Part shown: positions 4,928 through 35,758 of the stretch, in pieces
Layout of the letters: each line of letters opens with the position of its first letter
Numbering within the stretch: the first letter of the stretch is position 1
NCBI GenBank assembly: GCA_964035545.1
Contig: OZ037765.1
Coordinates: 13,154,698-13,218,697, forward strand
Direction of reading: 5' to 3'
DNA length: 64,000 nt
Origin: Bugula neritina
Taxonomy: Eukaryota > Animalia > Bryozoa
The notes under the pieces: model-generated
Seen by the model: the letters and a program-made list of their open reading frames with translations, nothing else
What the model was told of the DNA's origin: nothing
Database searches by the model: none
Translations under genes and position numbers: made by a program

Positions 4928-7900
4928 TTATACTGTAGATTCTGGAATCACTGAAAATTTTCGGACAACATTTGCAGCATGATTAATAGCTTGAAATTTT
5001 TCTTTTTTCTTTCTTGCGAACACTAAAATTATAAGCAGAGCTAATAGACCTACGAGTTGACCGACAGTTACACCGATTATCACGTTGGTATTGTCAATAA
5101 CTGGATGCAATTTTCTCAAAGTTGCAAAAACAACATCAACTGGAATTTTGGAAGAATTGTATTGTGTTGGCTGTGTGTCTAATGTTGTTTGCCATCTATT
5201 GGATGATGCTGGCCTTCCACTCCACGATGTTGGCTGTCCATTAGATGTTGAATGTCCAATTAGCAATGTTGAATGTGTTTTGAGCATGGTGTATCTTTTT
5301 AATGTTGTCTGCTCATTGACAGTTATCTGTCCATTTGAAGTTGTCTGCCCATTCAAAGTTGTTTTCCCACTTGAAAGTGGCTGCTTATTCACAGTTGTTG
5401 GTCTATACCATAATGGTTGCCCATTCACAATTGTCTGCCCATTCAAAGTTGTCTGCCCATCCGAAGTTGTTTGCTCATTTAGGGTTGTTTGTCCATTCAA
5501 AGTTGTCTGCCCATGTACTGTTGTCTGCCCATTCAGAGTTCTTTTCCCATTCAAATTTGCTTGACCATTTATTGTCATCTGCCCATTCAAAGTTGTCTGT
5601 CCATTCAATGGTGGCTGCCCATTTACAGTTGGCTGCCCATTTGAAGCTGTCTGCCTATTTAAAGTTGTTTGCTCATTTGAAGGTGTTTGTCCATTCAAAG
5701 TTGTCTGCGCATTTAATGTTGTCTGCCCATTCGAAGTTATCTGTCCATTCAATGATGGCTGCCCATTCACAGTTATCTGCCCATTCGAAGGTATCTGCCC
5801 ATTCACAGTTGGCTGCCCATTTGAAGTTGTCTGCCTATTTAAAGTTTGCTCATTTGAAAGTGGCTGCCCATTCACAGTTGTCTGCCCAATCGAAGTTTCT
5901 GACCCATTCAGAGTTGTCTGCCCACTCAGAGTTGTTTGTGCATTCAAAGTTGTCTGACCGTTCAAAGTTTTCTGCCCATTCAAAGTTGTTTTCCCACTTG
6001 AAAGTGGCTGCCTATTCACAGTTGTTGGTCTATACCATAATGGTTGCCCATTCACAATTGTCTGCCCATTCAGAGTTGTCTGCCCATCCGAAGTTGTTTG
6101 CTCATTTAGGGTTGTTTGTCCATTCAAAGTTGTCTGCCCGTGTACTGTTGTCTGCTCATTCAGAGTTCTTTTCCCATTCAAATTTGCTTGACCATTTATT
6201 GTCATCTGCCCATTCAAAGTTGTCTGTCCATTCAATGGTGGCTGCCCATTTACAGTTGGCTGCCCATTTAAAGCTGTCTGCCTATTTAAAGTTGTTTGCT
6301 CATTTGAAGGTGTTTGTCCATTCAAAGTTGTCTGTGCATTTAATGTTGTCTGCCCATTCGAAGTTATCTGTCCATTCAATGATGGCTGCCCATTCACAGT
6401 TATCTGCCCATTCGAAGGTATCTGCCCATTCACAGTTGGCTGCCCATTTGAAGTTGTCTGCCTATTTAAAGTTTGCTCATTTGAAGGTGGCTGCCCATTC
6501 ACAGTTGTCTGCCCAATCGGAGTTTCTGGCCCATTCAGAGTTGTCTGCCCACTCAGAGTTGCTTGTGCATTCAAAGTTGTCTGCCCATTCAGAGTTGTCT
6601 GCCCATTCAAAGTTGTCTGACCGTTCAAAAGTTTCTGCTCATTCAAAGTTGTCTGTGCATTTAAAGGTGTTTGAGCATTCAAAGTTGTCTGCCCATTCGA
6701 AGCTGTCTGTCCATTCAAAGTTGTCTGTCCATTCAATGGTGCATGCATATTCAAAGTTGACTTTCCATTTAAAATTTGCTGTGTATTTGAATCTACTTGT
6801 ACTTTTGATGTCACTGGCTGTCTATTTAATGCTGTTGTCAGATGCAAACTAAGAGGTGTTGTAGTGAACAGGTTGCTTGTTGCTGTTGAAGTTTGTATAA
6901 TGTTTAATGGTGCAGTTGGTTGCTCACTTGTTATAAAAGAGGCAGCTGGGGATGAAGATGGTTTATCTAGTGAACAACAATAAACAACATCACTCTTCAA
7001 TAGTATTGTGATCATTACAACACATTTCACAATCTGCTGTTTCACTTATTACTTAATTACTAGTCATGCATTTTATTCACTTTTATCACCATTAATTATA
7101 TTATAGCTTTTTGGCATATGATTTATTCAAACTTTTGAAATGGCTATGTTTAGTTGATCTTTTTTTAATATGTTGAGGTGAATGCAAGGTAATACCTGGA
7201 AGCACAATCCCTGTAATATTTGAGCCGGCCTCTCCAAGCTTAAAAATCATTTTTCCTGGTACACCCACATTGCTGTCTGTTACTATGTCAATTATTGCTG
7301 GTGTCCTGGATTGTGGTGTTGCATAAAAGTTTCTTCCGTCACCAGAATCAAATCCCACCTAAAAATATTTTTTTATTTTAACAGACAGTTAAGATTATGT
7401 TTTAGTTGTACATAACATTGATCCTAGTAGACAATAATAGCTTGAAGAATAATTAATTCTTGATTTAATGTGAGCAGGCTGAATACCAAACAAAATTTCA
7501 AGAAAAATAGTAATTATAAAAAACCCAAAACTATTATAACAAAATAATTCTTTGTATATTAGACTTGTTATAGAACATTACCAGAACTATAAACTTGCTC
7601 TTAAATTGCATGCTTTTTGTTTGTCAAAAACAAAAATTGTAGACTCCTATATTATAAGCATTGCAGTGTTATTTTAAAAAATATGGGTAACCCTCTTACT
7701 GTTTCACTTTGATTCAGCTACAGTAAGTTTACTCTTTGTACATGCAAATGCAGTTAATGTGAATTTAGTCACCTGCGCTGGTTTTGACCTTGCTACAGAT
7801 CCTTTAAGCCATTGTATCTCTTGATAGTTGAACATGGCAAATGTCTGGATACCATTTGATGCAATTATTGCTTGGAAGGTGTTGCCCTGATATGAAAAAA

Positions 7901-10900
7901 CAACTTTTGATAAATCATGAAATTGAAAGCATAAACCTCTATGCTAAGAACTGCATGAATAGTTTGTTTAAATTTGAAGAAGACAAATAGATATGCAGTC
8001 GCAAAAATGAAAAACCAAGTAATTAATCAATATAGCTCAATACAGATTTCGACAAAACTAAAATGCATAAACTCACAGGAGAATTTTCAGGTGGTGTAAC
8101 AGGGCACTGCAGTGCTTGTTTGTTATAAGCTCTCACATCTTCCCATGTTGCTATCATCAACCATGTTGCTTGAAATAATGCACCAGTCCCTAGTCTGTAT
8201 GCATCTCTAACTAATAAAACAACAATTTCATTTTTAGACGTAAGCGATACCTAGAATATATTATATATTTGTAACAATTGGGCCATTTCTATCCAACTAT
8301 TATATTATATATGCATATGTGAGCAGTGTGAATTTATTGAACTGTTTGTGATTTGTGAAATTTACACTGCGTTATGCCACTGGTCTAGGGGTTAGAGCTT
8401 TTGCCTAGTAAACATGAAGTCATGGGTTCGAACCTGACAAAGGCCATTAATGATGTTAGGAAGAGCATCCAGTCATAATTGCTCCTGTGCCCCATCTGAA
8501 CAAGTCCTTAGCCCACTTTAACAAAAACCCTTTCCATCAAGGGTTTTCTCACAGGGATAGCGACTATAAACTTGCATGAGTTTTTTGTGCCACTGCATAA
8601 CAACCTTGAAGAAACGTTTTCGAATTAATCCAGAGAAAGGAACAATTACCTGCTACGCTGCTCTTGTAATCCCAATATTTTTACATAGCTATAACCAAAA
8701 TCATCTTATAATTTGTGCTAATTGTTTAGAAAATAAAACAGTTGTAGTATAATCCAATGATCGCTGTACTCCAAATGTTAGGTATAAATTTATAATAAAT
8801 CATAATGCCTATTGAAATAAACTTAGTAAAATTATCTAAATACAATTTACAATGTACAGCATATGCTCACTATCTTGTGATGCCTTGAGTAATAAAGTCG
8901 AGTCTGTAGTTTCCCGAGACCACAATCTTCCTCCACGGCACAAATCTACGTCTGCCCAAAAAGGACATATCAGTGCAATATTTGCAGTCTTTAGTGGAAA
9001 TGGATAAGGTTTAAACTCTTGAAACTTTCTATCCAATGAAATCGCTCCATTTGTGCAAACCTTTGGATAAGAAGCAGCAAACTTTGAAAAACGTCATATA
9101 TTGCCATAACTTCATCTTGACATTTACTACGGGTTTACTTTATTAAATCAGTATTATTGAGTGTTTTTATAGCTTTGTAGAAAGTACTAAAACATGAAAA
9201 AGTTGACTTTGTCAATCTGTTCTTTTCACCAACGTAGTTCTGTTGTAGTAGCATAACTTGACTAGCCGGTGATGAACGTTTATATAATATATATAACACA
9301 CCAGTGCCTGCATATTGACCCAAGTGTAACTTAAATGTGCACAGCTAAAATCAGGATTAATAATATTTTCTAATATATTGCCAATTATGTACAAATGCAT
9401 GAAGAAAAAATATCTACTTCATATTGTTATGATTTTCAGATTTAGGGTTGATGTGCCACCAAGAGAGTCTATTTATCACTAGAGAAACTTCACCGAGTTA
9501 AGTCGAGTAGATATCGTTATATTTTAATACAAGAATACATAATAAAATCTAATGTACAACAGTAATGATACGCACGTCTATTTAATTTACAGCACTATCC
9601 TCAACTGAGCTAGTAGCGCGAAGCTGCTACTATTACTCATAAAACAGCCTAGCTAATTGGCTAATACATTGTTCCGGGTCAATACGCAACCTTGCGTATT
9701 GTGTTGCTGGTAGCTCCACGAGCCACCACAATATTGCAAAATCTCAGGTTCTTTAGCTTCCCCACTGCCTAGTGTGCAATAAACAATAATATCCCTATTC
9801 ATTGGAATAGCTGCAGTTTATGTGACAAAAAGCTTGAATGATAAATAATATTCTAAATTAGTCAATTTTTATTTTATGGAATCAATTTGTGAAAATTACG
9901 TGTTTCAATATTTAAGTATGCAGTATAAAATGTTAGATTCTGTGTAGATTTGCAAACTTATGAAAGTTATACTTATTAGTTTTTATTTTTGCTTAAATTA
10001 ATTTTAAGTAAATTTTACATTTACAATCATATTAGGCTAAACCTGTTTTAGACAAATGCAAATTGAAAGACGTTAAATTTTAAATAAATGATCTATAATA
10101 TTTTTTATGACAGAATGAATGTAGCCATTGTAACTCTTCTATAATAGCTTATTCTTATGCAGGTCAAGTATAGAGCTCGGTTTTCAAGCTATTTGACTGC
10201 ATGTAAATTTGCATGTGCTTAAAGCAGTTTAGCTAGTGATGATATTTGTTTTTTGCAATTGCATGCTAACTTCCCAACAATTTGTCCGGTTGTTGCAAAA
10301 AAAGTAAGTTATGCACAAGTAAACATGTACATGCAAAGTAAACGCGTAAACATGTAAAGTTTAATAGGTATTTACCATTGCTATACTAAGCTAAAGTACA
10401 GTTGTTGAAGCATTTTAGCTTGGGCCTTGCATGAAGCCGATTTTCACTGCATACGAAATAGATGTGAAAGTTAGCTCCCACACAATACTTAACCAATTAT
10501 AAATTTTCTTACATATATGTTTGAATAACTTTTCCCAAAGAATGAAATGCTCCGTGTGTAGGTTGAACTGCAGTCATCATCTTTTGTAGGTGCTGGAGAG
10601 TCACCTTGTGAGAGTCCAAATGGATAAAGTGTATCTGTGAAACACAAGTAATAGAAATGTATAGTTCAGAATATCTCTAATTCTTAATTATATGGATATA
10701 GTCACGAAGTATTCAATTAAGCCTCATTCTACTTTATAATTTATCTTACTTTATTTGAAAACGTACTGCTCGCATATGCTAATTATACATATTATATAGT
10801 AGTGTTGAGAATAGTTACATTTGATGTAGCAAAATAATTATTATAATGAGAATTACCGAAAAATAATAGAGATATGAACTAATAAAAACTGTATAATGAG

Positions 10901-11257
10901 AAGCGAGTTTTGTTGGAGCATTAAAATTCTTAAATATATTATACTATGTAGAAGTTGGCTTTAGCATAAACCTCAGTCCTGTCTGGTTTTATTAATCACA
11001 CAGCTTTTTATTCAAAAATATGAAACTTACAGCTAGTTAACAACATGGTGCAAAGGTTGGTAGAAAACATATGATATTAATTCAACGATTTAAAGGTCAA
11101 TTTTATAATTTTTTAATAATAATATATTTTCTAAATAGTAGAAATTAGGACTTGTAGAATGTTACTTACTGTTGCCAGTAGTCTCATCTATAGCAGTTGA
11201 CAATAAAAGAGAAGTATATATCAGCAGATAAACAACCTTCATGGTGCTGTCTTTCAT
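4928..11257 (-). CDS. NIDO-domain/hexapeptide-stalk type I membrane protein, copy 1 (~949 aa); exons 11257-11170, 10634-10513, 9060-8871, 8210-8077, 7886-7773, 7358-7196, 6966-4928
   Basis: Signal peptide MKDSTMKVVYLLIYTSLLLSTA; NIDO motifs LYPFG..GD, FFGKSY.IYVCTNGAISLD, ICPFWADVD, WLMIATWEDV, NTFQAIIASNG..TFAMFNY..IQW, VGFDSGDG, SNVGVPG; about 80 NGQTTL-type repeats; TM VIIGVTVGQLVGLLALLIILVFA followed by RKKK; tail ends IPESTV. Exon total 2850 nt, phases compatible. Confidence 0.9.
5290..6775 (-). repeat. Coding 18-bp tandem repeat (NGQTTL)n containing a 627-bp higher-order duplication
   Basis: Plus-strand unit approximately CCATTCAAAGTTGTCTGC; the distinctive string gttttcccac recurs at 5361 and 5988 (627 bp = 209 aa). 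Confidence 0.92.
8376..8586 (+). mobile_element. tRNA-derived SINE in intron 3 of NIDO copy 1
   Basis: A-box-like TGGTCTAGGGG, B-box GGTTCGAACC (8425-8434), T-run end; second copy at 2318-2519. Confidence 0.75.
9425..9730. mobile_element. Putative solo LTR (Gypsy-type 4-bp TSD) in intron 2 of NIDO copy 1
   Basis: TG...CA termini; perfect ATAT TSD (9421-9424 and 9731-9734); absent from the matching intron position in copies 2 and 3. Confidence 0.65.
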
Positions 11258-11802: not shown

Positions 11803-11965
11803 TAGAATTGTTCTGTAAGCAGCTCCAAGTTGGAGGGTGACTGAGTCCAGTAGTCCGGTTCTCAGATTTGGAGTTGGAAGGATTGCAATAAACTGAGCTG
11901 CCCCCACTCTCAAACTATTGCACTTAGTCACCCCCAACCCGGAGCTGCTTATAAAATAATTTTTA
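11803..11965. mobile_element. Short MITE upstream of NIDO copy 1
   Basis: Imperfect ~40-bp TIRs (aattgttctgtaagcagctccaagttggagggtgactgag versus ctta-gtcacccccaacccggagctgcttataaaataattt); empty site upstream of copies 2-4; a related end lies at ~48070-48106. Confidence 0.7.
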
Positions 11966-14280: not shown

Positions 14281-14364
14281 TTGTTTTAAGTCAGTTAGCT
14301 TGTTTAAATGTACACGGCAGATTCTGGAATCACTGAAAACTTTCGGACAACATTTGCAGTATGA

Positions 14365-17300
14365 TTAATAACTTGAAACTTTATTTTTTTTCTGTCTTGT
14401 TAACACTAAAATTATAAGCAGAGCTAATAGACCTACGAGTAGACCAACAGTTACACCAATTATCACGTTGGTGTTGTCAATCACTGGGTGAAATTTTTTT
14501 AAAATCGCAGAAACATCATCAACTGGTATTTTAGAAGAATTAGATTTTTTTGGCTGTCTTCCTAATGCTGTTTGCCATCTATTGGATGATGCTGGCCTTC
14601 TACTCCATGATGTTACTAGTCCATTAGATGTTGAATGTTCAGTTAACATCATCGAATGCATTTTAGACATGGTGTATCCTTTCAATGTTGTCTGCCTGCT
14701 CAATTTTGTCTGGCCAATCAAAGGTGTTTTCCCTTTCACAGTTGTTTGCCAATTCAAAGGCAACGGTCTTTTTAAAGTTGTTTGCGCATTTGAAAGTTTC
14801 TTTCCATTTGAAATTGTCTGTCCATTCAATGGTGTCTGACCATTCAAAGTTGTCTGACCATTTAATGCCATTTGCCCATTCAAAGTTGTCTGCCCATTTG
14901 AAAGTGTTTGCCCATTCTTAGTTGCCAGGCCATTTATTAGCAGCTGTCCATTCGAAGTTGTTTGCGCATTTGAAAGTTTCTTTCCATTTGAAATTGTCTG
15001 TCCATTCAATGGTGTCTGACCATTCGAAGTTGTTTGACCATTTAATGGCACTTGCCCATTCAAAGTTGTCTGCCCATTTGAAAGTGTTTGCCCATTCTTA
15101 GTTGCCAGGCCATTTATTAGCAGCTGTCCATTCGAAGTTGTTTGCGCATTTGAAAGTTTCTTTCCATTTGAAATTGTCTGTCCATTCAATGGTGTCTGAC
15201 CATTCGAAGTTGTTTGACCATTTAATGGCACTTGCCCATTCAAAGTTGTCTGCCCATTTGAAAGTGTTTGCCCATTCTTAGTTGCCAGGCCATTTATTAG
15301 CAGCTGTCCATTCGAAGTTGTCTGCGCATTCAATAATATTTGTCCTTTTAAAGTAGTTTGCCCATTTGAAGGTCTCTTTGCATTTGAAATTGTCTGCCCA
15401 TTTAATGGTGTCTGCCCACTTGAAGTCGTCTGACTATTCAAAGTTGTCTGACCATTCAAAGTTGTCTGACCATTTTGAGATGTCTTTATATTAAAAGTTG
15501 TCTGCCCATTTGAAGTTGTTTGCCCATTCCCAGTTGCTAGGCGATTTTTTAGTAACTGTCCATTCAAAGTTGTCTGCCCATTCAAAGTTGTCTGACCATT
15601 CAATGGTGTATGCATATTCAAAGTTATATTTCCTTTTAAAGTTGTTTGCCCATTTGAAGGTATTTTTGCATTTGAAGCTGTCTGCCCATTCAATGGTGTC
15701 TGCCCATTTGAAGTTGTCTGACCATTTGAAGTTTTTTGACCATTTGAAGTTGTCTGACCATTCGAAGTTGTCTGACCATTCGAAGTTGTCTGACCATTCA
15801 ATGGTGTATGCATATTCAAAGTTATATTTCCATTTAAAATTTGCTGTGCATTTGAATTCACTTGTATCTTCGATGTCACTGGCAGTCCATTTAATGCTGT
15901 TGTCAGATGTAAACTAAGAGGTGTTGTAGTGAACAGGTTGCTTGTTGTTGAAGATTGTATAATATTTGATGGCGCAGTTGGTTGTTCACTTGTTACAAAG
16001 ACAACTGGAGATGGAGATGGTTTATCTAGTGAATAACAATAAAAAACATTACTCTTCAATAGTATTGTGATCATTACAACACATTTCAAAATTTGCTGTT
16101 TCACTTATTACTTAATTACTAGTCATGTATTTTATTCACTTTTATCACCATTAATTATATTATAGCTTTTTGGCATATAATATATTAAAACTTTTGAAAT
16201 GGCTATGTTTAGTTGATCTTTTTTAATATGTTGAGGTGAACGTAAGGTAATACCTGGAAGGACAATTCCTGTAATATTTGAGCCGGCCTCTCCAAGCTTA
16301 AAAATCATTTTTCCTGGTACACCCACATTGCTGTCTGTTACTATGTCAATTATTGCTGGTGTTCTGGATTTTGGAGTTGCATAAAAGTTTTTTCCATCAC
16401 CAGAATCAAATCCCACCTGAAAATATTTAATTATGGAGACAGTTAAGATTATGTTTTAGTTTTAAACATTTAATTATAATATATCACAACGTGCAGTGAT
16501 ACTGTGCATGTCAAGTCAATTTTTAATAACCTGCTGTGAGCCTATAGGAGTAAAACAAGGATGTGTGATAAAACATACACCATTTTTGATCTTCCTTCTT
16601 ACTGTGTTTGATCTAACGAGTGAATATATATCATCTGGAGTCAAAATTAAATGCAAATTAAAAAGCATCTTTAATATCAAATGTCTTAGAGCTAAGACAA
16701 AGACAGCTTCCAGAACTATCCTTAAATTGCAGCATTCTGAAGACATTATGACAATTTGGCTCATTCTGAAAAGGAGCTACAACTTACACTCACAGTATAT
16801 AGTGCAGCATACACCTCTCTTTTGGTCTCACAGCCAATGCCAAGAAGAGGAAAGTCATGTACCAAGCTCATTCAAACACAAAAATACATGGTGAGTTCTC
16901 CATTATGGTTGGAGACCAAGTATTAGAACAAGTTGCTACCTTCAACTACTTAGGTAACTGTCTATCCTTTGAAGTCTAAAGCAAGCATTGATGCTGACAT
17001 AAGCCAAAGCGTTCAAGTGGGCAGCTTTGGATTTAGAGGGCAGCAGGCACATGTTTTAATAGCATTGATATATAATGCAAACAAACTAAACTAAAAATGT
17101 ACAATAAGCCATCGTTTTCCTGACACTACTTTATGCCTCTGAAATCTGCAGGTGATAAATAGCCATTGCAAAATATGCTGCCTGCAAACAATTTCACTAC
17201 CCAAATTATGGAATCAAGTGGTGAGATAGGCAGACTACTAGCAGTGTCCTTTAGGAACCTCAGACTACATGCATTATTGTCATGGTTGTGCAAAATCAAT

Positions 17301-18085
17301 TGAAGTGGCCTGGCCATGTAGTAAAATGGATGATAATCAACTACCAAAAGCGGATTGTCCCATAGGCGGTTAGAAAAAAAGGTATAAAGACACTGTAACG
17401 GAGAGACTTAAGCAGTGGTTCACTCAACTACAAACTTGAGAACTGCAGGACTTGTACAAGCAACACTGGAGAACTGTTGTGCATCAAGATATGGCTATAT
17501 TCTTGAACAACAACAATGCCAAAAAATAATAGAGAAGCAACAACTAAGTAAACCAGGGAGTTGTGCACTCATCCATTAGTGACTGGCTCTAGGAATAATT
17601 GTTCTTTTGCACTGTAGCAAATTATGGCAATAGCAACTTGAGCTTGTGAATCACACTAGAATGCAAAACCTCTAGAGAAGTTTTCTAGGTTTATGAATCA
17701 CGGCTCAGATCATGGCTTTAAAGCAGACTTCAAACTTGTTAGGTATTCGAGAGATTGCTAATGATAAGTAATATTGTGCACATATGATATATATCATGCT
17801 CTCATTTTATGCCCAGCAATGACATTCAGTGATTGAGCACTTTAAACATGGTCACAAACTCAAACTACTAGCATTCTGCAAAGCTTGTGACTCCTAGGTG
17901 ACCCCTAGAGTCCCTTGAGCACTCTGGCTTGGTTTTACACACCTTTTAAATATGCTTTAGTAAAACTATAAGTTTTTACTATTGCTAAGGTGTAGACCAT
18001 GGTGCTCTGTTCTGTGCTGATGAGGGGACAACTCTCAAAACAGCTGCTGTACGCAGATTGAGGACGCACGCACGCACGCACGCAT

Positions 18086-18168
<83 letters not shown>

Positions 18169-21100: not shown

Positions 21101-22333
21101 ACTATTCATCTAAAGAATTCTCTCAGAAGGTCTTTTAGTGATGTTGTTGACAGGGCTATTATTTTTACCATTATTATTAAAATATAATGAAATGAATATA
21201 ATCATGTGCGAGATAGAAACTACGCTTTCCCTGCTACTGACGATTTTTGTATAGGTACTTTATGAAAATTCTGTTGAATTTAAAATAAATTCATTTCAAC
21301 CATTAACCTATTTCATACAAACTTCGAATTCAATGTTAGCTATTGTTATATTTTATATATTCAACCTAAAGTTATTACATATAATCCAATTGTGTATTTA
21401 ACAAGTAATGCAACAGGTGCCACAACATCAACTTATCATAAATTGTCTTACAAATATTTTTGAATAACTTTTCCCAAAGAATGAAATGCTTCTTGTGTAG
21501 ATTGAACTGCAGTCATCATCTTTTGTAGGTGCTGGAGAGTCACCTTGTGAGAGTCCAAATGGATAGAGTGTATCTGTGAAACACAAGTTATAGAAATGTA
21601 TAGTTCAGGATATCTCTAATTCTCAATTATATAAGAATATAGTAATGAGAATATACTATATAGTAATGAGCTTCATTTTACTAATTTATCTTGTTACAAT
21701 TGAAAACATATCACTCGCATATCTTAAAATTGCATATTGACTATATATAGCAATGCTGACAATAACTTGATTTTAGCATAGTAAAATAATTATTATAAAA
21801 TGAATCAAGAAAAGAATGAAGACAATAAACTGACAAAACATTATAGTTCTGTGAGTTTTGGTGTAGCATTAAAGTTCTTAAATAGATTACATTATGTGGA
21901 ATTGGACACTAGTATAACCATCAGATCTTTTCAATTGCACCGTGAGTGATAGGATTGATTGCCAAATACTGTGTCCTTTTTATTAACACAAATAAAGAGC
22001 TCTGAAGTAACTATAGCGTTTCCTTTTTAACTTAGCTGCAACTAATCACAAAACTAAAATAGGATCATGCGCAGGTTTAACCAGATACAAAAATAATAAA
22101 GTTGCATATGAACTTCCAGCTATTGCCATACAAAGGTAAATAAAAAAATGGTGCTATTTCAGTGCTTTAAAAAAATTGATGATTTTTTAATATACTGTAA
22201 TATTTTCTAAATTGTGTAGATTATGATTTGTAGAATGTTACTTACTGTTGCCAGTAGTCTCATCTATAGCAGTTGACAATAAAAGAGAAGTATATGTCAG
22301 CAGATAAACAACCTTCATGGTGATGTCTTTCAT
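14365..22333 (-). CDS. NIDO/hexapeptide-stalk membrane protein, copy 2 (~823 aa); exons 22333-22246, 21573-21452, 20188-19999, 19013-18880, 18603-18490, 16416-16254, 16025-14365
   Basis: Same first six exon sizes as copy 1 (88,122,190,134,114,163); total 2472 nt, in frame; about 60 hexapeptides including a 180-bp triplication; TM present; tail truncated to RQKKNKVSSY*. Confidence 0.88.
16490..17700 (+). mobile_element. Degraded RTE-like LINE (RT and C-terminal region) in intron 5 of copy 2
   Basis: IGVKQGCV, IFNIKCLRAKTK..ILKLQHSED (decayed ELLFADD region), VLEQVATFNYLG; many stops and frameshifts. Boundaries approximate. Confidence 0.75.
18011..18057 (+). ncRNA. Minimal type I hammerhead ribozyme motif with a G12A core change, probably from a Penelope-like terminal repeat or retrozyme
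   Basis: Stem I UCUGUG/CGCAGA; core CUGAUGA; stem II GGGG/UCUC; AAAA in place of GAAA; short stem III CAG-cug-CUG; GUA cleavage triplet ending at 18051. Confidence 0.75.
18065..18169 (+). repeat. (CACG)n microsatellite directly after the hammerhead motif
   Basis: About 26 near-perfect tetranucleotide units. Confidence 0.97.
18249..18370. repeat. (TA)n/(TATG)n microsatellite
   Basis: Directly visible. Confidence 0.95.
20862..21015 (+). mobile_element. 3' fragment of an RTE LINE
   Basis: aaggaaggcccagattgagatttaaaaacactg (GRPRLRFKNT) matches the reverse complement of 51260-51370. Confidence 0.7.
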
Positions 22334-23678: not shown

Positions 23679-23960
23679 CATGGTCACAGTGGCACATTTG
23701 AAAAAAGGAAAAGGAACTTCTCGAACTTCCACGATAGCAGGTTGTCAACTATGTCACTCTTCAGCAATAGATCAGAGAACGTATTGAAATATTCAAAACT
23801 AAATAAGCATGAATCCCACCAAGAAAATGCTAACATTGAAATGTAAATAATCATGTGTACAGATATATTTTTTACTGTAGTTTAAAATAAGCTTTGCATA
23901 AATTAGCCTGTTTAATTTTAATATTAAGTAGTCTATAAGCTCAAAATACAGTTCAAGATG
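23679..23960 (+). pseudogene. Decayed duplicate of the Nse4 last exon and 3' flank
   Basis: cagtggcacatttg..aaaggaacttctcgaacttccac..caggttgtcaactat..aatcccaccaagaaaat aligns to 4604-4745 with stops and indels. Confidence 0.88.
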
Positions 23961-24026
23961 CTACAAAATAAACTAGTTTGTCAATTATCAACTAGTTTGT
24001 CGAACTTTGTACCATAGATTATAGAA

Positions 24027-27000
24027 TCATTGAAAACTTTCGGACAAAATTTGCAGCATGATTAATAACTTGAAACTTTGCTTCTCTTGATGCTTACGAA
24101 CAGTTTTCTGCGCATTTAAAGTCTTTTGCTCATTCACAGTTGGCTGCCCATTTAAAGTTGTCTGCCCATCTACAGTTGTTTGTCCATTCAAAGTTGTCTG
24201 CCTATTTGAAAGTGTTTGCTCACTCATAGTTGTCTGCCCTTTCAAAGTCAGTTGCCCATTCAAAGTCATTTGCCCATTCACAGTTGTTTGCCCATTTAAA
24301 GATGTTTTCTGATTCAAAGTTGTCTTTCCATGCAAAGTTTGCCGCCAATTCAAAGTTGTCTGCCCACTTGAAGGTTTTGGCCCACCCATAGTTGTTTGCC
24401 GATTAAAAGCTGTTTGCTCATTCAAGGGTGTCTTTTCATTAAAAGTTGTCTGCCCACTTGAAATTACTTTTCCAATCAGTGTTGTCTGACTATCCGAACG
24501 TGTCTGTGCCTTTAAAGTTGTCTCCTCATTCCACGTTGTTTGCTGATTCAAAATTGTCTTCCCAATTAATGTTTGCTGTGTTTTCGAATTTACTTGTATT
24601 TCTGTTGTTGTCCGTCTCTTGATTGAGGACAGAAGACGTCCGGGTGATGTCACAGGCTGCCCATTTAAGGAAGTTGTCAGATGTAATCTACGAGGTGTCA
24701 CAGTTGACAGGTTGCTTGTTGCTGTTGAAGATTGTATAATATCTAATGGTGTAGTTGGTTGCTCACTTGTTATAACAGAGGCAGCTGAAGACGAAGATGG
24801 CTTATCTAGGGAATAGTAATAATGAAACATAAATCTTATTAATAATGTTATGATAATTGGAAAGCAATTTCAAAATCTATTGCTTCACTTATTACTTATA
24901 ATTAGGTCATGTATTTTATTCACTTCTATCACTATTATTTTACAGCTTTTTGAAAATTTTGAAATAGCTATGTTCAATTAATGTTTTTTCAATATTGTCT
25001 ACCAAATGCTGAGGCGAATGCAAAGTATTACCTGGAAGCACAATCCCTGTAATATTTGAGCCGGCCTCTCCAAGCTTAAAAATCATTTTTCCTGGTACAC
25101 CCACATTGCTGTCTGTTACTATGTCAATTATTGCTGGTGTCCTGGATTGTGGTGTTGCATAAAAGTTTCTTCCATCACCAGAATCAAATCCCACCTGAAA
25201 AATTACATTTTAATTATCGACGGCTAAGATTATGTTTTATTTGGAATATAACATGAATTCTAGTTGACATTAGCAATGAGAAGGGTATTTAATTTAATTG
25301 ATTTAATATGAGCAAGCTAAAGAACAAACAAGATTTTAAGAAAAATTAAGAAAAAATCCAAAATCATTACAAAATAGTTTCGTGTATACATAATACACTA
25401 ATAGACAATTGCCAGAGCTATACCTGTTTTCCAACTGCACACTTTTTATCTGCAGAAAATAAACAAATATTGCAGACTCAGATATTTAAATTGTTGCAGT
25501 AATGTCTTTAAAATATAGGTAAACCTCATCATTGTTTTACTTTGCATGATTAAGCTAAACTAAGCTTGCCCTGATACATGCCTATGCAGTGTATTGCCAG
25601 AGCTATAAACATGTTTTTAAATTGCATGCTTTTTATTTACATGTATCAATAACAAAATATATTGTAGACTCATATATTTGAAGCATTGCTGTGTTATTCT
25701 AAAAATATGGGTAACTCTCGCATTGTTTCACCTTGGTTAAGCTAAAGTAGGTTTACTCTTGGTACATGTAAATGCAGTTAATATGAATTTAGTCACCTGC
25801 GCTGGGGTTGATCCTGCTACAGATCCATTAAGCCATTGAATCTCTTGATAGTTGAATATAGCAAATGTCGCGATGCCATTTGATGCAATTATTGCTTGGA
25901 AGGTGTTGCCCTGATTTAAAATAACATTAACTCTTTATTATAAGAAGTGACATGCTAAGGACTGTATAATTAGTTTTTCTATTTCTCACCTATCTCCGCT
26001 TTGTCCTGTTCAGGTACCGGGAAGGACTGTATAATTAGTTGCTCAAGTTTAAAACTTACTTACAATCCAATTAATTTGCAGTCACAAAAAGATAAGGAAT
26101 CAATATTGCCTTTCCAATTAGCAGTTTCTTGTCTATCAAAAGATTGATAACTACCCAATAATTTACCAAGATCAGCATCAGATGGATAAATACAAGAGTT
26201 TGATATAATTTCACAAAAAACTGAGTTAATATTTACAGGAGAATTTTCAGGTGGTGTAACAGGGCATGGCCAAGCTCGTTTGTTAAAAGCTCTCACATCT
26301 TCCCAAGTTGCTATCATCAACCATGTTGCTTGAAATGTTACGTTGTATGCATCTCCAACTAATAAAAGAGAACTTCAATTTTTATAAGTGACAGTTGCAG
26401 TATTGTGATGACTTTGCGGGTTGTTATTGGAACCTAAGCTAGGAGAACATAAAGCTCTTTGTATTCAAAGAGGAGACATATATCCGGTTGTAGATATCTT
26501 TATTTATACACCTGTAGTAAAAGAAACTCAAGTGTGGCCTCGGACAATTAATCTTGGTAAGTAAAGATAGTAGTGTAGTCCTCGAGCTCCAGTGGTAGAC
26601 TGAATTTATACTGGAGGTTATATACACAGGATTTTCGAATTGCAGTGTCCGAATTCGGCCGAATTCAGACGTCCGGATGGCATTCGGGTGTCCGGGCATT
26701 CAGACATGCGAATGCCATCCGGTTCTGAATCAGAGTTCAGATTAAAGTCCAAATCAGACGGAAGTAGACGCCAGAACCCAGTTTGAGCGTCCTAATTCTT
26801 CCGAAACGGACACTCCAAAATTTGGAGTGTCCGAATTCGGCCGAAATCGGACTTACAAACCTGAACAAAGAAAAACTAAACAAAGAAACCTACACCAATT
26901 AATTATCATAATAATGCAATGATAACTCCCAAAATCTACTGCAGCATTTCATATTTTTGTAATTTTCAATTTCACTTGGAGGTCGAAAACATTCCCTATC

Positions 27001-30000
27001 ACACTGCCAATGTATAAACAAAGTATTAGTATTTTAATATTTATAAGTTGTAACATAATTTTATCCAAAAGAATTCAATTTTTGCTGTAAACTGTGTACT
27101 GAGAAAATGAAGCAATAGAGGCATAAGTTCTATAACATGCATCCATCATAAAATACAAATTCAACAATAAACAGTAGCCTACCGACTACTGAATTAATAC
27201 AATCAGTAAAAATAAATTCATGATAAATAGTATTGGCTATAGAAATTAAATTAGTACAACTATCTAAATAAAATTTACAATGTACTGTATATATAAGCAT
27301 ATGCTCACTATCTTGTGATGCCTTGAGTAATAAAGCTGGGTCTGTAGTTTCCCGAGACCATAATCTTCCTCCACGACACAGATCTGCATCTGCCCAAAAA
27401 GGGCATATCAGTGCAACATTTGCAGTTTTTAGTGGAAATGAATGCGGTCTATACTTTTTGAATGGTTTATCCAATGAAATACCTCCATTTGTACAAACCT
27501 TTGAAAAGGAAACAGCATATACAACTCTATATATCTTCATAAATTATCATGATTTCACCCTGACACCTCGATTTTACTTGATTAGATCAATACTATCAAG
27601 TATTTTTATAGCTTTGTAGAAAATACTAAAACATGCTTTAAAAATGGCTTTATCAATGTGTTCTTTTTGTTGCAGGAGCTTTTTGTTCTAGCTTTAAGTA
27701 AAATATTGTTTGATGAAAGCTTTTTGTGAAAGCTTTCGCAATAGCTTTTTACTGGTAGCTTTTGTTTGATGAGTCAGTACAGCTCAAGAACTAAAGGTGG
27801 AAAGTTTGCTTTTGTTAAAGTTGCAGGCAATTTAGACTGTATTGCCAAAATAATTGTAAGTTTTGTGAGAAATATAAACTGTTGGCATTAGGCAAAAGGT
27901 TGAGTTATGTCCTCTATCCATTCACCCTTCATTAAGTGAATCACAACGCATAGGCATCCGTGCTGGCACACCTTTTATTAAAGTAGCTTCTACATACCTG
28001 CCCAAACGTAGCCTAAATGTGCATTAGTAAAATTGAGTTAGCAATATTTTCCAACGCAATTGTGTAAAGATGCATGTATGAAAAGAGCTATTTCATACTA
28101 TAATATAATCCCCCCTCTAATTTGTCTTCTCACTATAGAGTGCAACAAAAAACAATCACTATTTATGGGAATAACTATAATATTTTATAAAAGAAAGCAT
28201 TTAAATGGTAAACGTCTTAAAATAGCCAATTAGTTGCTAAATAAAATTAATTTGGGAAAATTACATTTTGTATATTTACAATTGAATGAAATTAATTATC
28301 CTTTTTAGGGATTTAAATAACTTTTGTAATTATTAAATAGATGAAAAAGTCTTTCAAAATGTTTGTCAGTCGTATTACTCACTGGGTTATTGTTTTTAAG
28401 ATTATTATTAAAATATAACCTAATACCTGTACAGTAAATAAACTTATATCCTGTTGCTGCTGTAGATGTGTATAACTTATGTAAGTTGTGTTACTTCAAA
28501 ATAAATTTATTTTACCCATTATCTGTTTTGTACAACATTTGTATTTAACTATTTTTATATTTTATATTTAAACCTATTGAAAAGTTGCTACATATATGAT
28601 ATAAGTTATAACCCAATTGTGTATGTAACAACTAATGCAACAACTACCAATCTATGCATCCATTAACCTATTTTGTACAGTTTTTGCATTCAATGCTACT
28701 GTTATATATCTTGTATTTAGGCCAGGGCTGTCCAACAGGCGGCCCCAGGGTCGGATGTGGCCTGCAGCCTACATTTATGTGGCCCTTGAAGGCATAAAGC
28801 TAAAATTATTTTTCACACATATACATGAATTAAAGAAAAAACTACCTTTAAATGCCTTATTTATACACATGCTACAAAACATGCAGCCTGCAGTAACTAT
28901 TAAGGGACTCTACTGCGTAATGATTCATAAAGTTTTCGAATAAAATAGTCTAAAAAATGTTGATGCTGTAGCCCCCAGTTCAAACTGAAGTTTACAATGT
29001 GACCTTCGCCACCAAAACCTTCCCTTTCAGTGGCCCTCGGTCTGAAAAGGTTGAATACCTCTGATTTAGGCTTATTGGAAAGTTGCATTGGCAATGCACT
29101 TAACATAATATAATGCAACTGATACTAATCTAAGCACAGTTGTCAGTTAACACTAACTTATCATAAATTATCTTACATATAGTTTTGAATAACTTTTCCC
29201 AAAAAATGAAATGCTCTGTGTGTAGTTTGAATTGCAGTCATCATCTTTTGTAGGTGCTGGAGAGTCACCTTGTAAGAGTCCAAATGGATAGAGTGTATCT
29301 GTGAAACACAAGTTATAGAAATGTGCAGTTCAGAATATCTCTAATTCTTAATTATATGGATATAGTCACAAAGTATTCAATTTAACCTTATTTTACTAAT
29401 ATATTATGTTACTTGAAAACAGATTCAATCACTCGTGTTAAAATCACATATAGGCTATAATATATTAATGATGACTCTAACTAGATTTTAGTATAGTAAA
29501 ATAATTAATGTAAAATTATAAACTCAAGAAAAATAAGAGGAAAATGAGCTGACAAAACATTATAGTTCTGTGAGTTTTGATGTAGCATTAAGGTTCTTAA
29601 ATAGATTACATTATGTAGAATTGGACACTAGTATAACCATCAGATCTTTTCAATTGCACCACAGTTAGTAGGATTGATTGCCACATACTGTGTCCTTTTC
29701 TATAATAAAACAGTCTGAAGTAATCATAATCTTTCCTTTTTAATTTAGCTGCAACTAATCACAAAACTACAACAGAATCATGCAGGTTTAACCAGATACA
29801 AAAATAATAAAGTTGTGGGCTTACAGCTAACATGATATAAAGGTAGATAAAAACATGGTCTTAATCAAAGCTTTAAAAAATTCCATGATAATTTTTAAAT
29901 AATATAATATTTTCTAAATAGTGAAATGTTACTTACTGTTGCCAGTAGTCTCATCTATAGCAGTTGACAATAAAAAAGAAGTATATATCAGCAGATAAAC

Positions 30001-30024
30001 AACCTTCATGGTGATGTCTTTCAT
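24027..30024 (-). CDS. NIDO/hexapeptide protein, copy 3 (~525 aa), no TM, predicted secreted; exons 30024-29937, 29298-29177, 27498-27309, 26358-26237, 25910-25797, 25194-25032, 24805-24027
   Basis: Total 1578 nt, in frame; exon 4 is 12 nt shorter than in copies 1/2; about 25 hexapeptides; ends VRKHQEKQSFKLLIMLQILSESFQ*. Confidence 0.86.
26420..26990. mobile_element. Unclassified non-autonomous insertion with a hairpin and CCGAA/TTCGG palindromic array, intron 3 of copy 3
   Basis: Absent from the same intron of copy 4; hairpin gagctccagt..actggag (26584-26616) is shared with 50588-50622. Boundaries approximate. Confidence 0.6.
28723..29063. mobile_element. hAT-family MITE (341 bp)
   Basis: TIRs CAGGGCTGTCCAAC / GTTGAATACCTCTG; perfect 8-bp TSD ATTTAGGC (28715-28722 and 29064-29071); empty site atttaagcttattg in copy 4 intron 2. 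Confidence 0.88.
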
Positions 30025-31351: not shown

Positions 31352-31635
31352 TGTGGTCACAGTGGTACATTTGAAGAAAGGAAATGGAACTTCTTGAACT
31401 TCCACAATAGCAGGTTGTCAACTATGTCACTCTCCAGCAATGGAGAGAACTTATTGAAATATTCAAAACTAATTAAGCATGAATCCCACCAAGAAAATGT
31501 TGACATTGAAATGTAACTAATCATTTGTACAGATATATATATTTTTATTTACTGTAGTTTGAAATAAGCTTTGCATAAATTAACCTGTTTAATTTTAATA
31601 TTGAGTAGTCTATAAGCTCAAAATACAGTTCAAGA
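31352..31635 (+). pseudogene. Decayed duplicate of the Nse4 last exon and 3' flank
   Basis: ggaacttcttgaacttccac, ccagcaatggagagaacttattgaaa and aatcccaccaagaaaat match 4631-4745; same junction as at 23679. Confidence 0.88.
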
Positions 31636-31683
31636 TGCTACAAAGTAAACTAGTTTGTCGAACTTTGTACCATAGATATAGAA

Positions 31684-34600
31684 TCATTGAAAACTTTCGG
31701 ACAACATTTGCAGCATGATTAATAATTTGAAACTTTGCTTCTCTCCATGCTTACGAACAGTTGTCTGCCTATTTGAAAGCATTTGCTCACTCATAGTTGT
31801 CTGCCCCCTCAAAGTCTTCTGCCCATTCACAGTTGTTTGCCCATTTAAAGATGTCTTTTGATTCAAAGTTGTCTTTTCATTCAAAGTTGTCTGCCCACTT
31901 GAAGGTTTTGGCCCACTCATAGTTGTTTGCCTAATCAAAGCTGTTTGCTCATTCAAGGGTGATTTTTCATTCAAAGTTGTCTGCCCACTTGAAGGTATTT
32001 TTTCATTCAGTGTTGTCTGACTATCCGAAAGTGTCTGTGTCTTTAAAGTTGTCTCCTCATTCCATGATGTTTGCTGATTAAAAATTGTCTTCCCAATCAA
32101 TGTTTGCTGTGTTTTTGAATTTAATTGTATTTCTGTTGTTGTCTGTCTCTTGATTGAGGACAGAAGATGTCCGGATGATGTCACAGGCTGCCCATTTGAG
32201 GAAGTTGTCAGATGTAATCTAGGAGGTGTCACAGTTGACAGGTTGCTTGTTGTTGTTGAAGATTGTATAATATTTAATGGTGCAGTTGGTTGCTCACTTG
32301 TTATAACAGAGGCAGCTGGGGATGAAGATGGTTTATCTAGTGAATAACAATAAACAACATTACTCTTCAATAGTATTGTGATCATTACAACACATTCAAA
32401 ATATCTGCTGTTTCACTTATTACTTAATTACTAATTATGTATTTTATTCACTTTATCACACTTATTTTATAGCTTTTTGGCATATATAATATATTCAAAG
32501 TTTTGAAATGGCCATATTTAGTTGATTATTTTTTTAATATGTTGAGGTGAATGCAAATTAATACCTGGAAGCACAATCCCTGTAATATTTGAGCCGGCCT
32601 CTCCAAGCTTAAAAATCATTTTTCCTGGTACACCCACATTGCTGTCTGTTACTATGTCAATTATTGCTGGTGTCCTGGATTTTGGAGTTGCATAAAAGTT
32701 TTTTCCATCACCAGAATTAAATCCTACCTGAAAAATAACATTTTAATTATAAACAGCTAAGATTATGTTTTAGTTAGAATATAACATAAATTCTAGTAGA
32801 TATTATTAATGTGAAAGGTATAATAAATTCAATTGATTTAATATGAGCAAGACAAAGAGCAAAAAAACTTTGAAGAAAATTAAGAAAATCTCAAAATCAT
32901 AACGAAATATATTTATATATTTATTAGACTATAGCATTACCAGAGCTAAACTAATATTTTCAAATTTCACACTTTTTGTTTGCAAAATCAAATATTGCAG
33001 ACTCAGATATATTTAAAAAGTTTCAGTATTACTTAAAATTAAAATAGAGGTGAACATTTTCATTGTTTCGCTTTGGCTAAGCTATATATAAGTTCACTCC
33101 TGGTACATGTAAATGTAATTAATGTGTATTTCGTCACCTGCGCTGGTTTTGATCCTGCTACAGATCCTATAAGCCATTGAATCTCCTGATAGTTGAACAT
33201 GGCAAATGTCTCGATACCATTTGATGCAATTATTGCTTGGAAAGTGTTGCCCTGATTTAAAAAAACAACTTTTGGTAAGAATTGACATGCTAAGAGCTGT
33301 ATAAATAGTTGCTCAAGTTTAAAATTCACTTAATTTATAATACAACTGATTTGCAGTCACACAAAGGATAAAACTTTGAAAAGGAATCAATATTGTCTTT
33401 CCAGCTAGCAGTTTTTGCCAATCAAAAAATAAACTACTACTCAATTATTTGCAAGGATCAGCATCAGATGGATAAATACAAAAATCATATTTTGAGTTAT
33501 GCTACAATCATCCACTTACACAACTTGTTTGTTGTTTTACTATTTGTTTGTAACAACAGTTTATTACAGCAGGAAGTAGAGTTCCTTCATGTTACTTCAT
33601 AATAATGTATAATTGTACACTGTCTATATAAATGGTTCAGTTTTATGGAATAAAACAGTTATGTTATAGCAGCACTGCCGAGTGTTGTGTCAGCTATAAT
33701 TGAACTGAAATAACATGCAATGTATTAAAATACTCACAGGAGAATTTCCAGGTGGTGCAACAGGGCACGGCTTTGCAAATTTGTTAAAAGCTTTCACATC
33801 TTCCCAAGTTGCTATCATCAACCATGTTGCTTGAAATATTACGTTATACGCATCTTCAACTAATAAAAGAGAAATTATGTCTGTTTACAAGTTACAGTTG
33901 GAGTATGTCATGTTTTTGTGATTTTCCACCTACTGCCCATGTATAAACAAAGTATTAGTTTGTTAATATTCACATAATTCTAACCAATTTAATTCAATTT
34001 TTGCTGCAAACACCGTACTGAGAACAGAAAGCAATAGTGTATAGTCTAATGACATACTTTCAATGTTAGGTTTAAATTCATAATAAATAATAATACCTAT
34101 TGAAATAAACTTAAAGTAAAATTATCTAAATGCAATTTTTAATGTACAGCATATGCTTACTATCTTGAGATGCCTTGTGTAATATAGATGGGTCTGTAGT
34201 TTCCCGAGACCACAATCTTCCTCCACGGCACAGATCTGCGTCTGCCCAAAAAGGACAAATCAGTGAAACATTAGCAATCTTTAGTGGAAAGGGATCTGGG
34301 TTAAATTTTTTGAATGGTTTATCCAATGAAATCACTCCATTTGTACAAACCTTGGAAAAAGAACCAGCAAATAACTAATCTATATACTTTTACAAGTTGT
34401 CATGACTCCAATGTGAGACTTAATGCTTTTACTTGATTAGGTCAGTATAATTGTTTACAGCTTTTTCTATAAACTATTAAAACATGCTTTAGAAAAATTG
34501 GCTTTGTCAATGTTCTTTTTATTAAAGTAGTTTCTTGCATACTAGCCCAAACATAACCAGTTTTCACTGTATGAAATCCTTTATTATATTAATTTATTTT

Positions 34601-35758
34601 TATTAATAACATTATAACCTAATACCTGTAGACTGTAGATTAAAACAAACTTATATGCTGTCCCTGGTGCTAGATGTGTATAACTTTATTTACTTCAAAA
34701 CAAATTCATTTCACCCATCACCTGTTTTATACAGCTTTTGTATTCAATGCTAAAGTTCTATTGTTATATCCAATATTTAAGCTTATTGAAAAGTTCTTAT
34801 ACATATAAACAAAATGTATTTAACATATAATGCAACAGTTGCCAATCTATAAAGCATAGTTAAATGATAGTTATATTTATCATCATAAATTATCTTACAT
34901 ATAGTCTTGAATAACTTTTCCCAAAAAATGAAATGCTCCGTGTGTAGCTTGAATTGCAGTCATCATCTTTTGTAGGTGCTGGAGAGTCGCCTTGTGAGAG
35001 TCCAAATGGATAGAGTGTATCTGTAAAACACAAGTTATAGAAATGTATAGTTCAGAATATCTCTAATTCTTAATTATATGGATACAGTCACAAAGTATTC
35101 AATTAAAGCTTATTTTACTAATATATTATGTTACTTGAAAACAGAACGCTCACATATGTTAAAATTACATATAGGCTATAATATATTAATGCTGACTCTA
35201 ACTAGATTTTAGTATAGTAAAATAATTAATGTAAAATAAATAAAGAAAAATAAGAGGAAAATGAGCTGACAAAACATTATAGTTCTGTGAGTTTTGATGT
35301 AGCATTAAAGTTCTTAAATAGATTACATTATGTAGAATTGGACACTAGTATAACCATCAGATCTTTGTGTTTGCACCACAGTTAATAGGATTAATTGCCA
35401 CATACTGTGTCCTTTTCTATAATAAAACAGTCTGAAGTAATCATAATTTTTCCTTTTTAATTTAGCTGCAAATAATCACAAAATTAAAACAGAATCATGC
35501 ACGTTTAACCAGATACAAAAGTAATAGAGTTGTGGGCTTACAGCTAATATGATATAAAGGTAGATAAAAACATGGTTTTATGTCAAAGCTTTAAAAAATT
35601 CCATGATGATTTTTAAATATAATATTTTCTGAATAGTATAAATTAGGACGTGCAGAATGTTACTTACTGTTGCCTGCAGCAGTCTCATCTATAGCAGTTG
35701 ACAATAAAAGAGAAGAATATATCAGCAGATAAACAACCTTCATGGTGCTGTCTTTCAT
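31684..35758 (-). CDS. NIDO/hexapeptide protein, copy 4 (~484 aa), no TM, predicted secreted; exons 35758-35668, 35020-34899, 34350-34161, 33859-33738, 33251-33138, 32727-32565, 32336-31684
   Basis: Total 1455 nt, in frame; about 19 hexapeptides; ends VRKHGEKQSFKLLIMLQMLSESFQ*. Confidence 0.86.

What the first reader, a model, noticed from the sequence alone, without database searches (positions are those of the whole stretch)
4928..35758. Four-gene tandem system of NIDO-headed hexapeptide-stalk proteins with membrane and secreted forms
Seen: four intact 7-exon paralogs with signal peptide, a single NIDO domain and an (NGQTTL)n stalk of graded length (about 80, 60, 25, 19 units). There are three C-terminal states: TM with full tail, TM with stub tail, and no TM (two copies). 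Known: NIDO normally occurs in multi-domain matrix/adhesion proteins (nidogen, alpha-tectorin, SNED1, MUC4), and I do not recognise a NIDO-only head on this stalk. Inference: a lineage-specific recognition or adhesion cassette with signalling-capable, anchored-only and soluble members, as in paired receptor/decoy families (immunity, allorecognition, settlement adhesion or gamete recognition).
Basis: partly seen in the sequence, partly recalled or inferred. Interest (0 to 1): 0.88.

Follow-up and report, generated by a model that had tools for sequence, protein, structure and literature searches.

The report
Bryozoan NIDO-headed surface protein array
This is a real cluster of duplicated genes in the bryozoan Bugula neritina for 'lollipop' cell-surface and secreted proteins (one nidogen-like head on a repeat stalk); a similar cluster expanded separately in another bryozoan, and the heads vary in exposed loops, so they are candidates for surface coating or recognition, though no signalling motif or function is shown.

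Summary
Observation confirmed: four open 7-exon genes (949, 823, 525, 484 aa; all 24 introns GT-AG, same phases), each with signal peptide, one NIDO domain and a degenerate LNGQTT stalk. The genome is Bugula neritina tzBugNeri2.1. A fifth, older paralog with a short stalk and TM starts at window 464, and Watersipora subatra has a related array of at least seven genes beside DCAF11 with unrelated S/T stalks, TM and no-TM forms; the two arrays expanded independently. B's stub tail is real (seen in independent DNA and a sister lineage). C/D lost the TM by one shared out-of-frame deletion. Short tails look ancestral, and A's tail has no tyrosine, only a PDZ-type end, so 'signalling receptor' is unsupported. 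Two thirds of NIDO codons are invariant; two loop codons test as positively selected, and that loop also varies in Watersipora. Best reading: apical coat/adhesion proteins working like DEX-1 or MUC4 with diversified ligand-binding heads; non-self recognition is an open rival. NIDO-only plus S/T-linker proteins also occur in frogs and fish. Splicing is only indirectly supported. The scan noted the variable patches before on this same DNA (s1-478972). New variant of a known kind; interest 0.55.

The parts
4928..11257 (-). Gene A, 949 aa: exons 11257-11170, 10634-10513, 9060-8871, 8210-8077, 7886-7773, 7358-7196, 6966-4928; SP-NIDO-stalk-TM-28-aa tail ending ESTV
5267..6790 (-). A hexapeptide stalk, about 83 units, with an internal 627-bp duplication (98% identical)
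5015..5083 (-). A transmembrane helix (aa 899-921)
8106..8118 (-). Variable loop of exon 4 in A: codons 165 and 167 (Q/T/R/F and L/K/W/K in A-D) next to Cys169, one of two Cys that A-D have and E lacks
9000..9033 (-). Variable loop of exon 3 in A (aa 80-91), also variable among Watersipora paralogs
14365..22333 (-). Gene B, 823 aa: exons 22333-22246, 21573-21452, 20188-19999, 19013-18880, 18603-18490, 16416-16254, 16025-14365; TM 14466-14398; 10-aa tail
14384..14391 (-). A8 run that puts B's tail in another frame than A's; same length in X1 contig and stub tail shared by sister-lineage contig L034
14650..15855 (-). B stalk, 67 in-register units, with a 180-bp triplication
24027..30024 (-). Gene C, 525 aa, no TM: exons 30024-29937, 29298-29177, 27498-27309, 26358-26237, 25910-25797, 25194-25032, 24805-24027
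24092..24104 (-). C deletion junction (stalk joined to the DNA just after the TM); holds a phase-1 donor-like GTAAGC at 24097
31684..35758 (-). Gene D, 484 aa, no TM: exons 35758-35668, 35020-34899, 34350-34161, 33859-33738, 33251-33138, 32727-32565, 32336-31684; same junction, donor-like GT at 31754
404..464 (-). Exon 1 (signal peptide) of gene E, the fifth paralog; exons 2-7 lie upstream of the window (G000:C1 about 13,150,437-13,153,701); 334 aa, about 48-aa S/T stalk, TM, 12-aa tail
1773..4748 (+). Nse4 (NSMCE4A-like) gene between E and A, convergent with A (internal exon ends approximate)
   Evidence: Nse4_C PF08743
13993..14269 (+). Copy of the Nse4 3' part carried in the B unit
23680..24000 (+). 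Degenerate copy of the Nse4 last exon/3' UTR carried in the C unit
31354..31680 (+). Degenerate copy of the Nse4 last exon/3' UTR carried in the D unit
39638..40738 (-). WD40 (DCAF11-like) large exon flanking the array; a 60% identical counterpart sits inside the Watersipora array

Best explanation
A cheilostome-bryozoan family of 'lollipop' glycoproteins of the apical cell coat (glycocalyx, cuticle or mucus interface). Each has one NIDO head that binds an extracellular partner through exposed loops, held away from the membrane by a low-complexity spacer. Spacer length sets reach (E very short, B and A long); C and D release the same head-plus-spacer into the matrix. It works like DEX-1 or MUC4 (tether and coat, no tyrosine signalling; A may be clustered by a PDZ scaffold). 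The array evolves by tandem duplication, repeat slippage, loss of the TM and gene conversion that keeps promoter/exon 1 and exon 6 alike while the middle of the head diverges, which spreads ligand specificity. Shown: anatomy, conservation, purifying selection, variable loops, independent expansion. Inferred: apical location, glycosylation, ligand binding, PDZ use.
For: Open frames and shared intron phases in five genes; about 67% of NIDO codons at omega near 0; no stop in 196 stalk units, pN/pS about 0.65 (crude); same layout with unrelated S/T stalks and short basic tails in at least seven Watersipora genes, so composition and not sequence of the stalk is kept; separate clades per genus; promoter/exon 1 at 90-98% and exon 6 at 96-99% against exons 3-5 at 85-94%; DEX-1 is a NIDO-TM protein that works as a secreted apical-matrix protein even without its TM (PMC6325711); exon-enriched depth in the probable RNA run X8.
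Against: No spliced joint was displayed and X8 is only guessed to be RNA; no tissue data. Stalk S+T is 27-33%, below the 40% PTS rule (PMC4948705), so it may not behave as a mucin bottle-brush. Positive selection at head loops fits recognition as well as it fits a coat. The B-type copy of the sister lineage has a frameshift in exon 4 and lacks the exon-6 donor.
Confidence: 0.5

Rival explanations
1. Non-self recognition cassette (allorecognition between colonies, symbiont or microbe recognition, or gamete recognition) in which NIDO is the variable domain, TM forms are receptors or self markers and C/D are soluble decoys.
For: Codons 165/167 under positive selection (M1a vs M2a LRT 21.7, p 2e-5 for A-D); the same loop and the exon-3 loop differ among near-identical Watersipora paralogs (LRT 9.3, p 0.01); soluble forms arose in both genera; the B-type copy of a sister lineage is about 14% diverged from B, against about 6-10% for DNA around A, hinting at turnover or deep alleles; bryozoans are listed among animals with allorecognition (PMC9546547).
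Against: No ITAM/ITIM or any tyrosine motif; the whole selection signal in Bugula rests on two multi-nucleotide codons and vanishes without them (LRT 0.4); gene conversion can inflate such tests; X1 contigs are nearly identical to the assembly (no sign of high allelism, but probably the same or a close colony); nidogen domains have not been reported in allorecognition proteins (10.1101/2022.03.25.485889).
Confidence: 0.25
2. Structural or adhesive matrix protein whose stalk is the working part: Gln-periodic hexapeptides cross-linked by transglutaminase (cementoin-like) or stacked as beta-hairpins or a beta-solenoid in cuticle or larval glue.
For: Pfam Cementoin (52 bits, cut-off 27) and Bactofilin (30.5, cut-off 27.9) hits on A exon 7; Gln at position 4 in 73% of units; NG turns; basic pI 10-11.7; short hairpins in the low-confidence model.
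Against: Hits follow from 6-residue periodicity; AlphaFold pLDDT 35; Atlas hits under 0.9; Lys only 2% in A; E and all Watersipora members lack the hexapeptide.
Confidence: 0.12
3. C and D are not separate secreted proteins but spliced-in modules: the phase-1 GTAAGC at their deletion junction splices to the phase-1 exon-2 acceptor of the next gene, giving a D-C-B multi-NIDO membrane protein like those of frogs and fish.
For: Donor-like sites at 24097 and 31754 are phase 1, as is intron 1; multi-NIDO plus S/T-linker TM proteins exist.
Against: Each copy keeps its own conserved promoter, signal exon and poly(A)-like signals; the donor differs from A's sequence by one C-to-T change.
Confidence: 0.05
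4. Redundant duplicates in decay: A/B carry the function, C/D (and some B alleles) are drifting towards pseudogenes, and the three C-terminal states are accidents.
For: C/D arose by an out-of-frame deletion; lesions in the sister-lineage B copy and in Watersipora W3 (stop in exon 2) and W6 (no exon 5).
Against: C and D keep open frames, all splice sites, and dN below dS in exons 3-6.
Confidence: 0.08

Closest known systems
C. elegans DEX-1 (PMC6325711)
   Same: NIDO ectodomain, low-complexity region, single TM; can act as a secreted form in the apical matrix
   Different: Two NIDO plus an EGF domain, single gene; no paralog array or variable-loop evidence
MUC4 / Mesh / SUSD2 (NIDO-AMOP-VWD) membrane proteins
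   Same: Nearest named sequence relatives of the head (about 40% identity to mesh-like proteins); MUC4 joins NIDO to a tandem-repeat region (own knowledge)
   Different: No AMOP, VWD, Sushi or EGF; the stalk lies C-terminal to NIDO and misses the PTS composition rule
Uncharacterised frog and fish NIDO-only proteins (XP_068098040 Hyperolius, XP_041425685 Xenopus, XP_040182910 Rana, XP_066520069 Hoplias)
   Same: Only NIDO domains plus S/T-rich linkers, some with a C-terminal TM or hydrophobic anchor
   Different: Several NIDO domains per chain; outside the bryozoan clade in the tree, so convergent; pipeline names only
Hydractinia Alr family (PMC9546547)
   Same: Tandem array of TM genes with diverged ectodomains and pseudogenes in a colonial animal
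   Different: Ig/Fn3 folds, ITAM/ITIM tails, 41 genes, proven polymorphism and linkage; none of these is shown here
Trappin/elafin cementoin repeat (PF10511)
   Same: Gln-containing hexapeptide repeat attached to a globular head
   Different: No WAP domain, few Lys, no homology beyond periodicity; cross-linking untested
Sponge MAFAP1 (PMC11670116)
   Same: Signal peptide, globular head, long short-period repeat stalk (69 pentapeptides)
   Different: Ig-related heads, acidic repeat; the Bugula stalk is basic

Membership tests
NIDO-domain proteins (PF06119) | Full-length NIDO domain | tested here: met
   Exons 3, 5, 6 above the cut-off singly, exon 4 at 21.8 bits; profile 6-185 covered
Nidogen / alpha-tectorin / SNED1 / MUC4 / Mesh | Partner domains (EGF, G2, VWD-C8-TIL, ZP, AMOP, Sushi) | tested here: not met
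   No such domain in exon 2 or exon 7; models end at TM/tail or stop
Membrane mucins | PTS domain with at least 40% Ser+Thr and over 5% Pro (PMC4948705) | tested here: not met
   S+T 27-33%, best 100-aa window 33-39%; some Watersipora stalk exons reach about 38%
Membrane mucins | Dense O-glycosylation | not testable with these tools
   Needs glycoproteomics
Paired immune receptors / Alr-type | ITIM or ITAM in a cytoplasmic tail, or a charged TM residue for an adaptor | tested here: not met
   A tail has no Tyr; B has one terminal Tyr; E none; TMs carry no Lys/Arg/Asp/Glu
Paired immune receptors / Alr-type | Tandem paralogs with diversified ligand-binding ectodomain | tested here: inconclusive
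   Variable loops and significant site tests, but two codons drive the Bugula result and conversion is present; enrichment of variation outside strands not significant, p 0.10
Allorecognition loci | High allelic polymorphism and linkage to fusion/rejection | not testable with these tools
   Only one same-lineage data set, near-identical
Cementoin / transglutaminase substrates | Gln/Lys hexapeptide repeat that is cross-linked | tested here: inconclusive
   Pfam hit above cut-off, Gln 11-13% but Lys 2-6%; cross-linking untested
Hexapeptide beta-helix / bactofilin-like solenoids | Confident beta-solenoid fold | tested here: inconclusive
   Single-sequence model pLDDT 35
GPI-anchored proteins (C, D) | C-terminal hydrophobic signal of about 15-20 aa | tested here: not met
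   Only about 9 apolar residues followed by a polar end; no KD window above 1.6

The most novel reading that the evidence does not exclude
NIDO serves as the variable recognition domain of a bryozoan self/non-self system: an array kept beside DCAF11 across cheilostomes, re-expanded in each lineage, with membrane and soluble members and hypervariable loops, which would be a first molecular candidate for bryozoan allorecognition or symbiont recognition and a first function for a stand-alone NIDO domain.
Probability: 0.15. Interest if true: 0.85.

Novelty: new variant of a known kind. Interest (0 to 1): 0.55.

Why it matters
NIDO has no solved structure by sequence or fold search here and no settled ligand; small single-NIDO proteins with natural loop variants are a clean system for finding what it binds. 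Bryozoans show colony recognition, host specific symbionts and foul ships, yet my paper searches found no text joining bryozoans with NIDO proteins. A conserved-position, independently re-expanded array gives concrete genes to test in a tractable species. If it is only a coat protein family it is a modest example of convergent NIDO-plus-spacer design.

Tried and rejected
B stub tail as a homopolymer assembly error: rejected (X1 contig 14222-14430 has no gap, X2's B-type contig has gaps only past the stop, L034 ends RRKKNKVLSY). Low word share of runs X2-X8 as locus-specific hyperpolymorphism: better explained by a sister lineage about 6-10% diverged in introns (B. neritina is a cryptic complex, PMC11480708). 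Homolog search with the non-repeat start of exon 7: nothing. Search with the Watersipora head region: only itself and one mesh-like hit. AlphaFold on B exon 7 alone: pLDDT 35, unusable; a repeat-segment alignment failed on a frame slip and the last fold job went to NIDO. PDB sequence and Foldseek searches: no match; VIA-align best Z 5.0 to beta-supersandwich domains of glycoside phosphorylases, below the trust level. Atlas features search on the stalk: under 0.9. Hexapeptide elsewhere in the genome: none. Nse4 was not found in the 161 kb of Watersipora DNA held. The joined spliced proteins were not sent to any search or folding tool; searches were exon by exon, and joined models were used only inside local scripts.

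Full report
Source. The assembly has 216,009,554 bases in 321 pieces, C1 is 35,640,107 and C9 10,879,868 bases. This matches Bugula neritina tzBugNeri2.1, GCA_964035545.1 (216.00 Mb, 320 scaffolds plus mitochondrion, longest 35.64 Mb, chromosome 9 10.88 Mb; PMC11480708). The nearest named protein hit is from the bryozoan Watersipora subatra.

Observation. Four minus-strand 7-exon models are open from ATG to stop (949, 823, 525, 484 aa) with 24 GT-AG introns in phases 1,0,1,0,0,1. Searched exon by exon, exons 3-6 tile the Pfam NIDO profile from 6 to 185 of 186. Exon 7 holds the stalk: 83, 67, 27 and 19 in-register 18-bp units with consensus LNGQTT, strongly degenerate. This repeat occurs nowhere else in the genome. 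No stop lies in 196 units and pN/pS against the consensus is about 0.65 (crude, as units share ancestry), so the stalk is kept as protein. A and B have a 23-aa TM; C and D have none. The joined proteins were used only in local scripts, never sent to a search or folding tool.

The array is larger and older than four genes. A fifth paralog, E (334 aa), begins at window 464 and runs upstream; it has the same exon phases (intron 3 GC-AG), a roughly 48-aa S/T stalk without hexapeptides, a TM and a 12-aa basic tail. Nse4 sits between E and A, and units B, C and D each carry a copy of the Nse4 3' end, so A-D arose in place by tandem duplication. In Watersipora chromosome OY755158.1, 161 kb hold at least seven NIDO genes with the same exon layout and a DCAF11-like exon among them on the same strand. 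Their stalks are unrelated S/T-rich sequences from about 150 to 1,790 aa; four end in a TM with a 13-26-aa tail and two end without a TM. In the tree, Bugula A-E plus the Watersipora genes form one side of a 97/90 branch; A-D group together (92/99) and the Watersipora genes form their own clade (97/94), so each genus expanded its array separately (partial rows for some genes, W1 left out).

C-terminal states. B differs from A by one base in an A8 run (14384-14391). I suspected an assembly error, but the X1 contig covers it without a gap, and a metagenome contig from a sister lineage (L034) has the same stub tail. C and D share one deletion that joins the stalk to the DNA just behind the TM, out of frame. 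One stretch of DNA is thus read in three frames. Since E and the Watersipora TM forms have short basic tails, B's state is at least as likely to be ancestral as A's. A's 28-aa tail has no tyrosine; it ends ESTV, which fits a class I PDZ ligand (own knowledge) that no other member shares. The TMs have no charged residue. The 'signalling-capable' label is therefore unsupported.

Head variation. Promoter and exon 1 are 90-98% identical among A-D and exon 6 96-99%, while exons 3-5 are 85-94% and inner introns 58-88%; dS follows the same pattern. This points to gene conversion at both ends around an older, diverged core. About 67% of NIDO codons have omega near 0. Site models favour a positively selected class (LRT 21.7 for A-D, 27-33 with L034), but it rests on two codons, 165 and 167, and disappears without them; multi-nucleotide changes and conversion can inflate such tests. 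Independent support: near-identical Watersipora paralogs W4, W6, W7 differ in the same exon-4 loop and in the exon-3 loop (LRT 9.3, p 0.01). On a confident model of a 41%-identical mesh-like NIDO (pLDDT 96) 11 of 15 positions with three or more states fall in loops, though the overall enrichment outside strands is not significant (p 0.10). A-D have gained two cysteines (111, 169) in loops, possibly a new disulfide (inference). The model has no solved relative.

Expression and turnover. All four runs laid were contigs. X1-X3 are DNA. X8, guessed to be RNA, has depth about 33-48 at exons 2-3 and 168 on the B-type 3' end against 0-8 in most intron bins, and contigs of equal depth (32.8) stop near both sides of intron 2; no joint row was displayed for it. 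This suggests but does not show splicing. L034 is B-type but about 14% diverged from B, more than the 6-10% seen around A (a figure biased by the 85% cut-off), and has a frameshift in exon 4 and no exon-6 donor; Watersipora W3 and W6 also carry lesions. The array turns over by birth and death.

Mechanism. Most likely (0.5) these are apical coat or tether proteins: a ligand-binding NIDO head on a spacer whose length, not sequence, matters, with soluble versions in the matrix. DEX-1 is the functional precedent: NIDO, low-complexity region, TM, and full rescue by a TM-less form in the apical matrix (PMC6325711). If the stalk is extended at about 0.25 nm per residue (own knowledge for mucins), A would reach roughly 150 nm and E about 12 nm. 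Rivals: non-self recognition (0.25), a cross-linked or beta-structured stalk as glue or cuticle (0.12; Cementoin and Bactofilin hits, no confident fold), decay (0.08), D-C-B read-through splicing via the phase-1 donor-like sites (0.05).

Comparison and novelty. It is a NIDO-domain family but not a member of nidogen, tectorin, SNED1, MUC4 or Mesh, fails the PTS rule for mucins (PMC4948705) and lacks ITAM/ITIM motifs that mark Alr tails (PMC9546547). NIDO-only proteins with S/T linkers and a TM exist in frogs and fish under pipeline names, so the design is convergent rather than unique. No paper in the library joins bryozoans with NIDO proteins of this kind. Verdict: real, new variant of a known kind, interest 0.55; the recognition reading has probability about 0.15-0.25 and would deserve 0.85.

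Noticed in passing
window 9421-9730: About 310-bp high-copy insertion in intron 2 of A, absent from X1, X2 and X3 contigs: a polymorphic MITE-like element
   Followed up: partly
window 61932-63605: 93 copies of an 18-bp minisatellite, open in all three minus frames (ORFs of 566-641 aa), apparently intronic in an fn3/LDL-receptor-type gene; not related to the LNGQTT repeat
   Followed up: partly
window 54091-56756 (+): Multi-exon gene that reads like a JmjC-domain protein; the pieces tested gave no Pfam hit
   Followed up: no
window 16500-17500, 48748-49713, 51200-53000: Decayed LINE/reverse-transcriptase remnants
   Followed up: no
window 13515-13830: Two tRNA-like SINE copies, very high copy number in all runs; ARAGORN finds no tRNA
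   Followed up: partly
window 57149-57469: 27-bp tandem repeat, 11 copies
   Followed up: no
G000:C1:20.70-21.01 Mb (L018-L030), C5:6.60 Mb (L032), C6, C7, C9, C2: A second, distant set of NIDO genes, several joined to long T/S-rich repeats (L021 1,160 aa, L023, L030) and VWD-type exons; they form a separate branch
   Followed up: partly
Watersipora array, L033 (DCAF11-like exon): DCAF11-like exon lies inside the NIDO array, with stops upstream of a 285-aa frame; RefSeq models XP_067934148 and XP_067934158 appear to fuse neighbouring paralogs
   Followed up: partly
L013-L016, upstream of gene E: Dense LTR and LINE remnants, including Gypsy-type pol frames
   Followed up: no
window 5335-6852 (+): 505-aa antisense ORF over A's stalk, a by-product of the repeat
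   Followed up: yes
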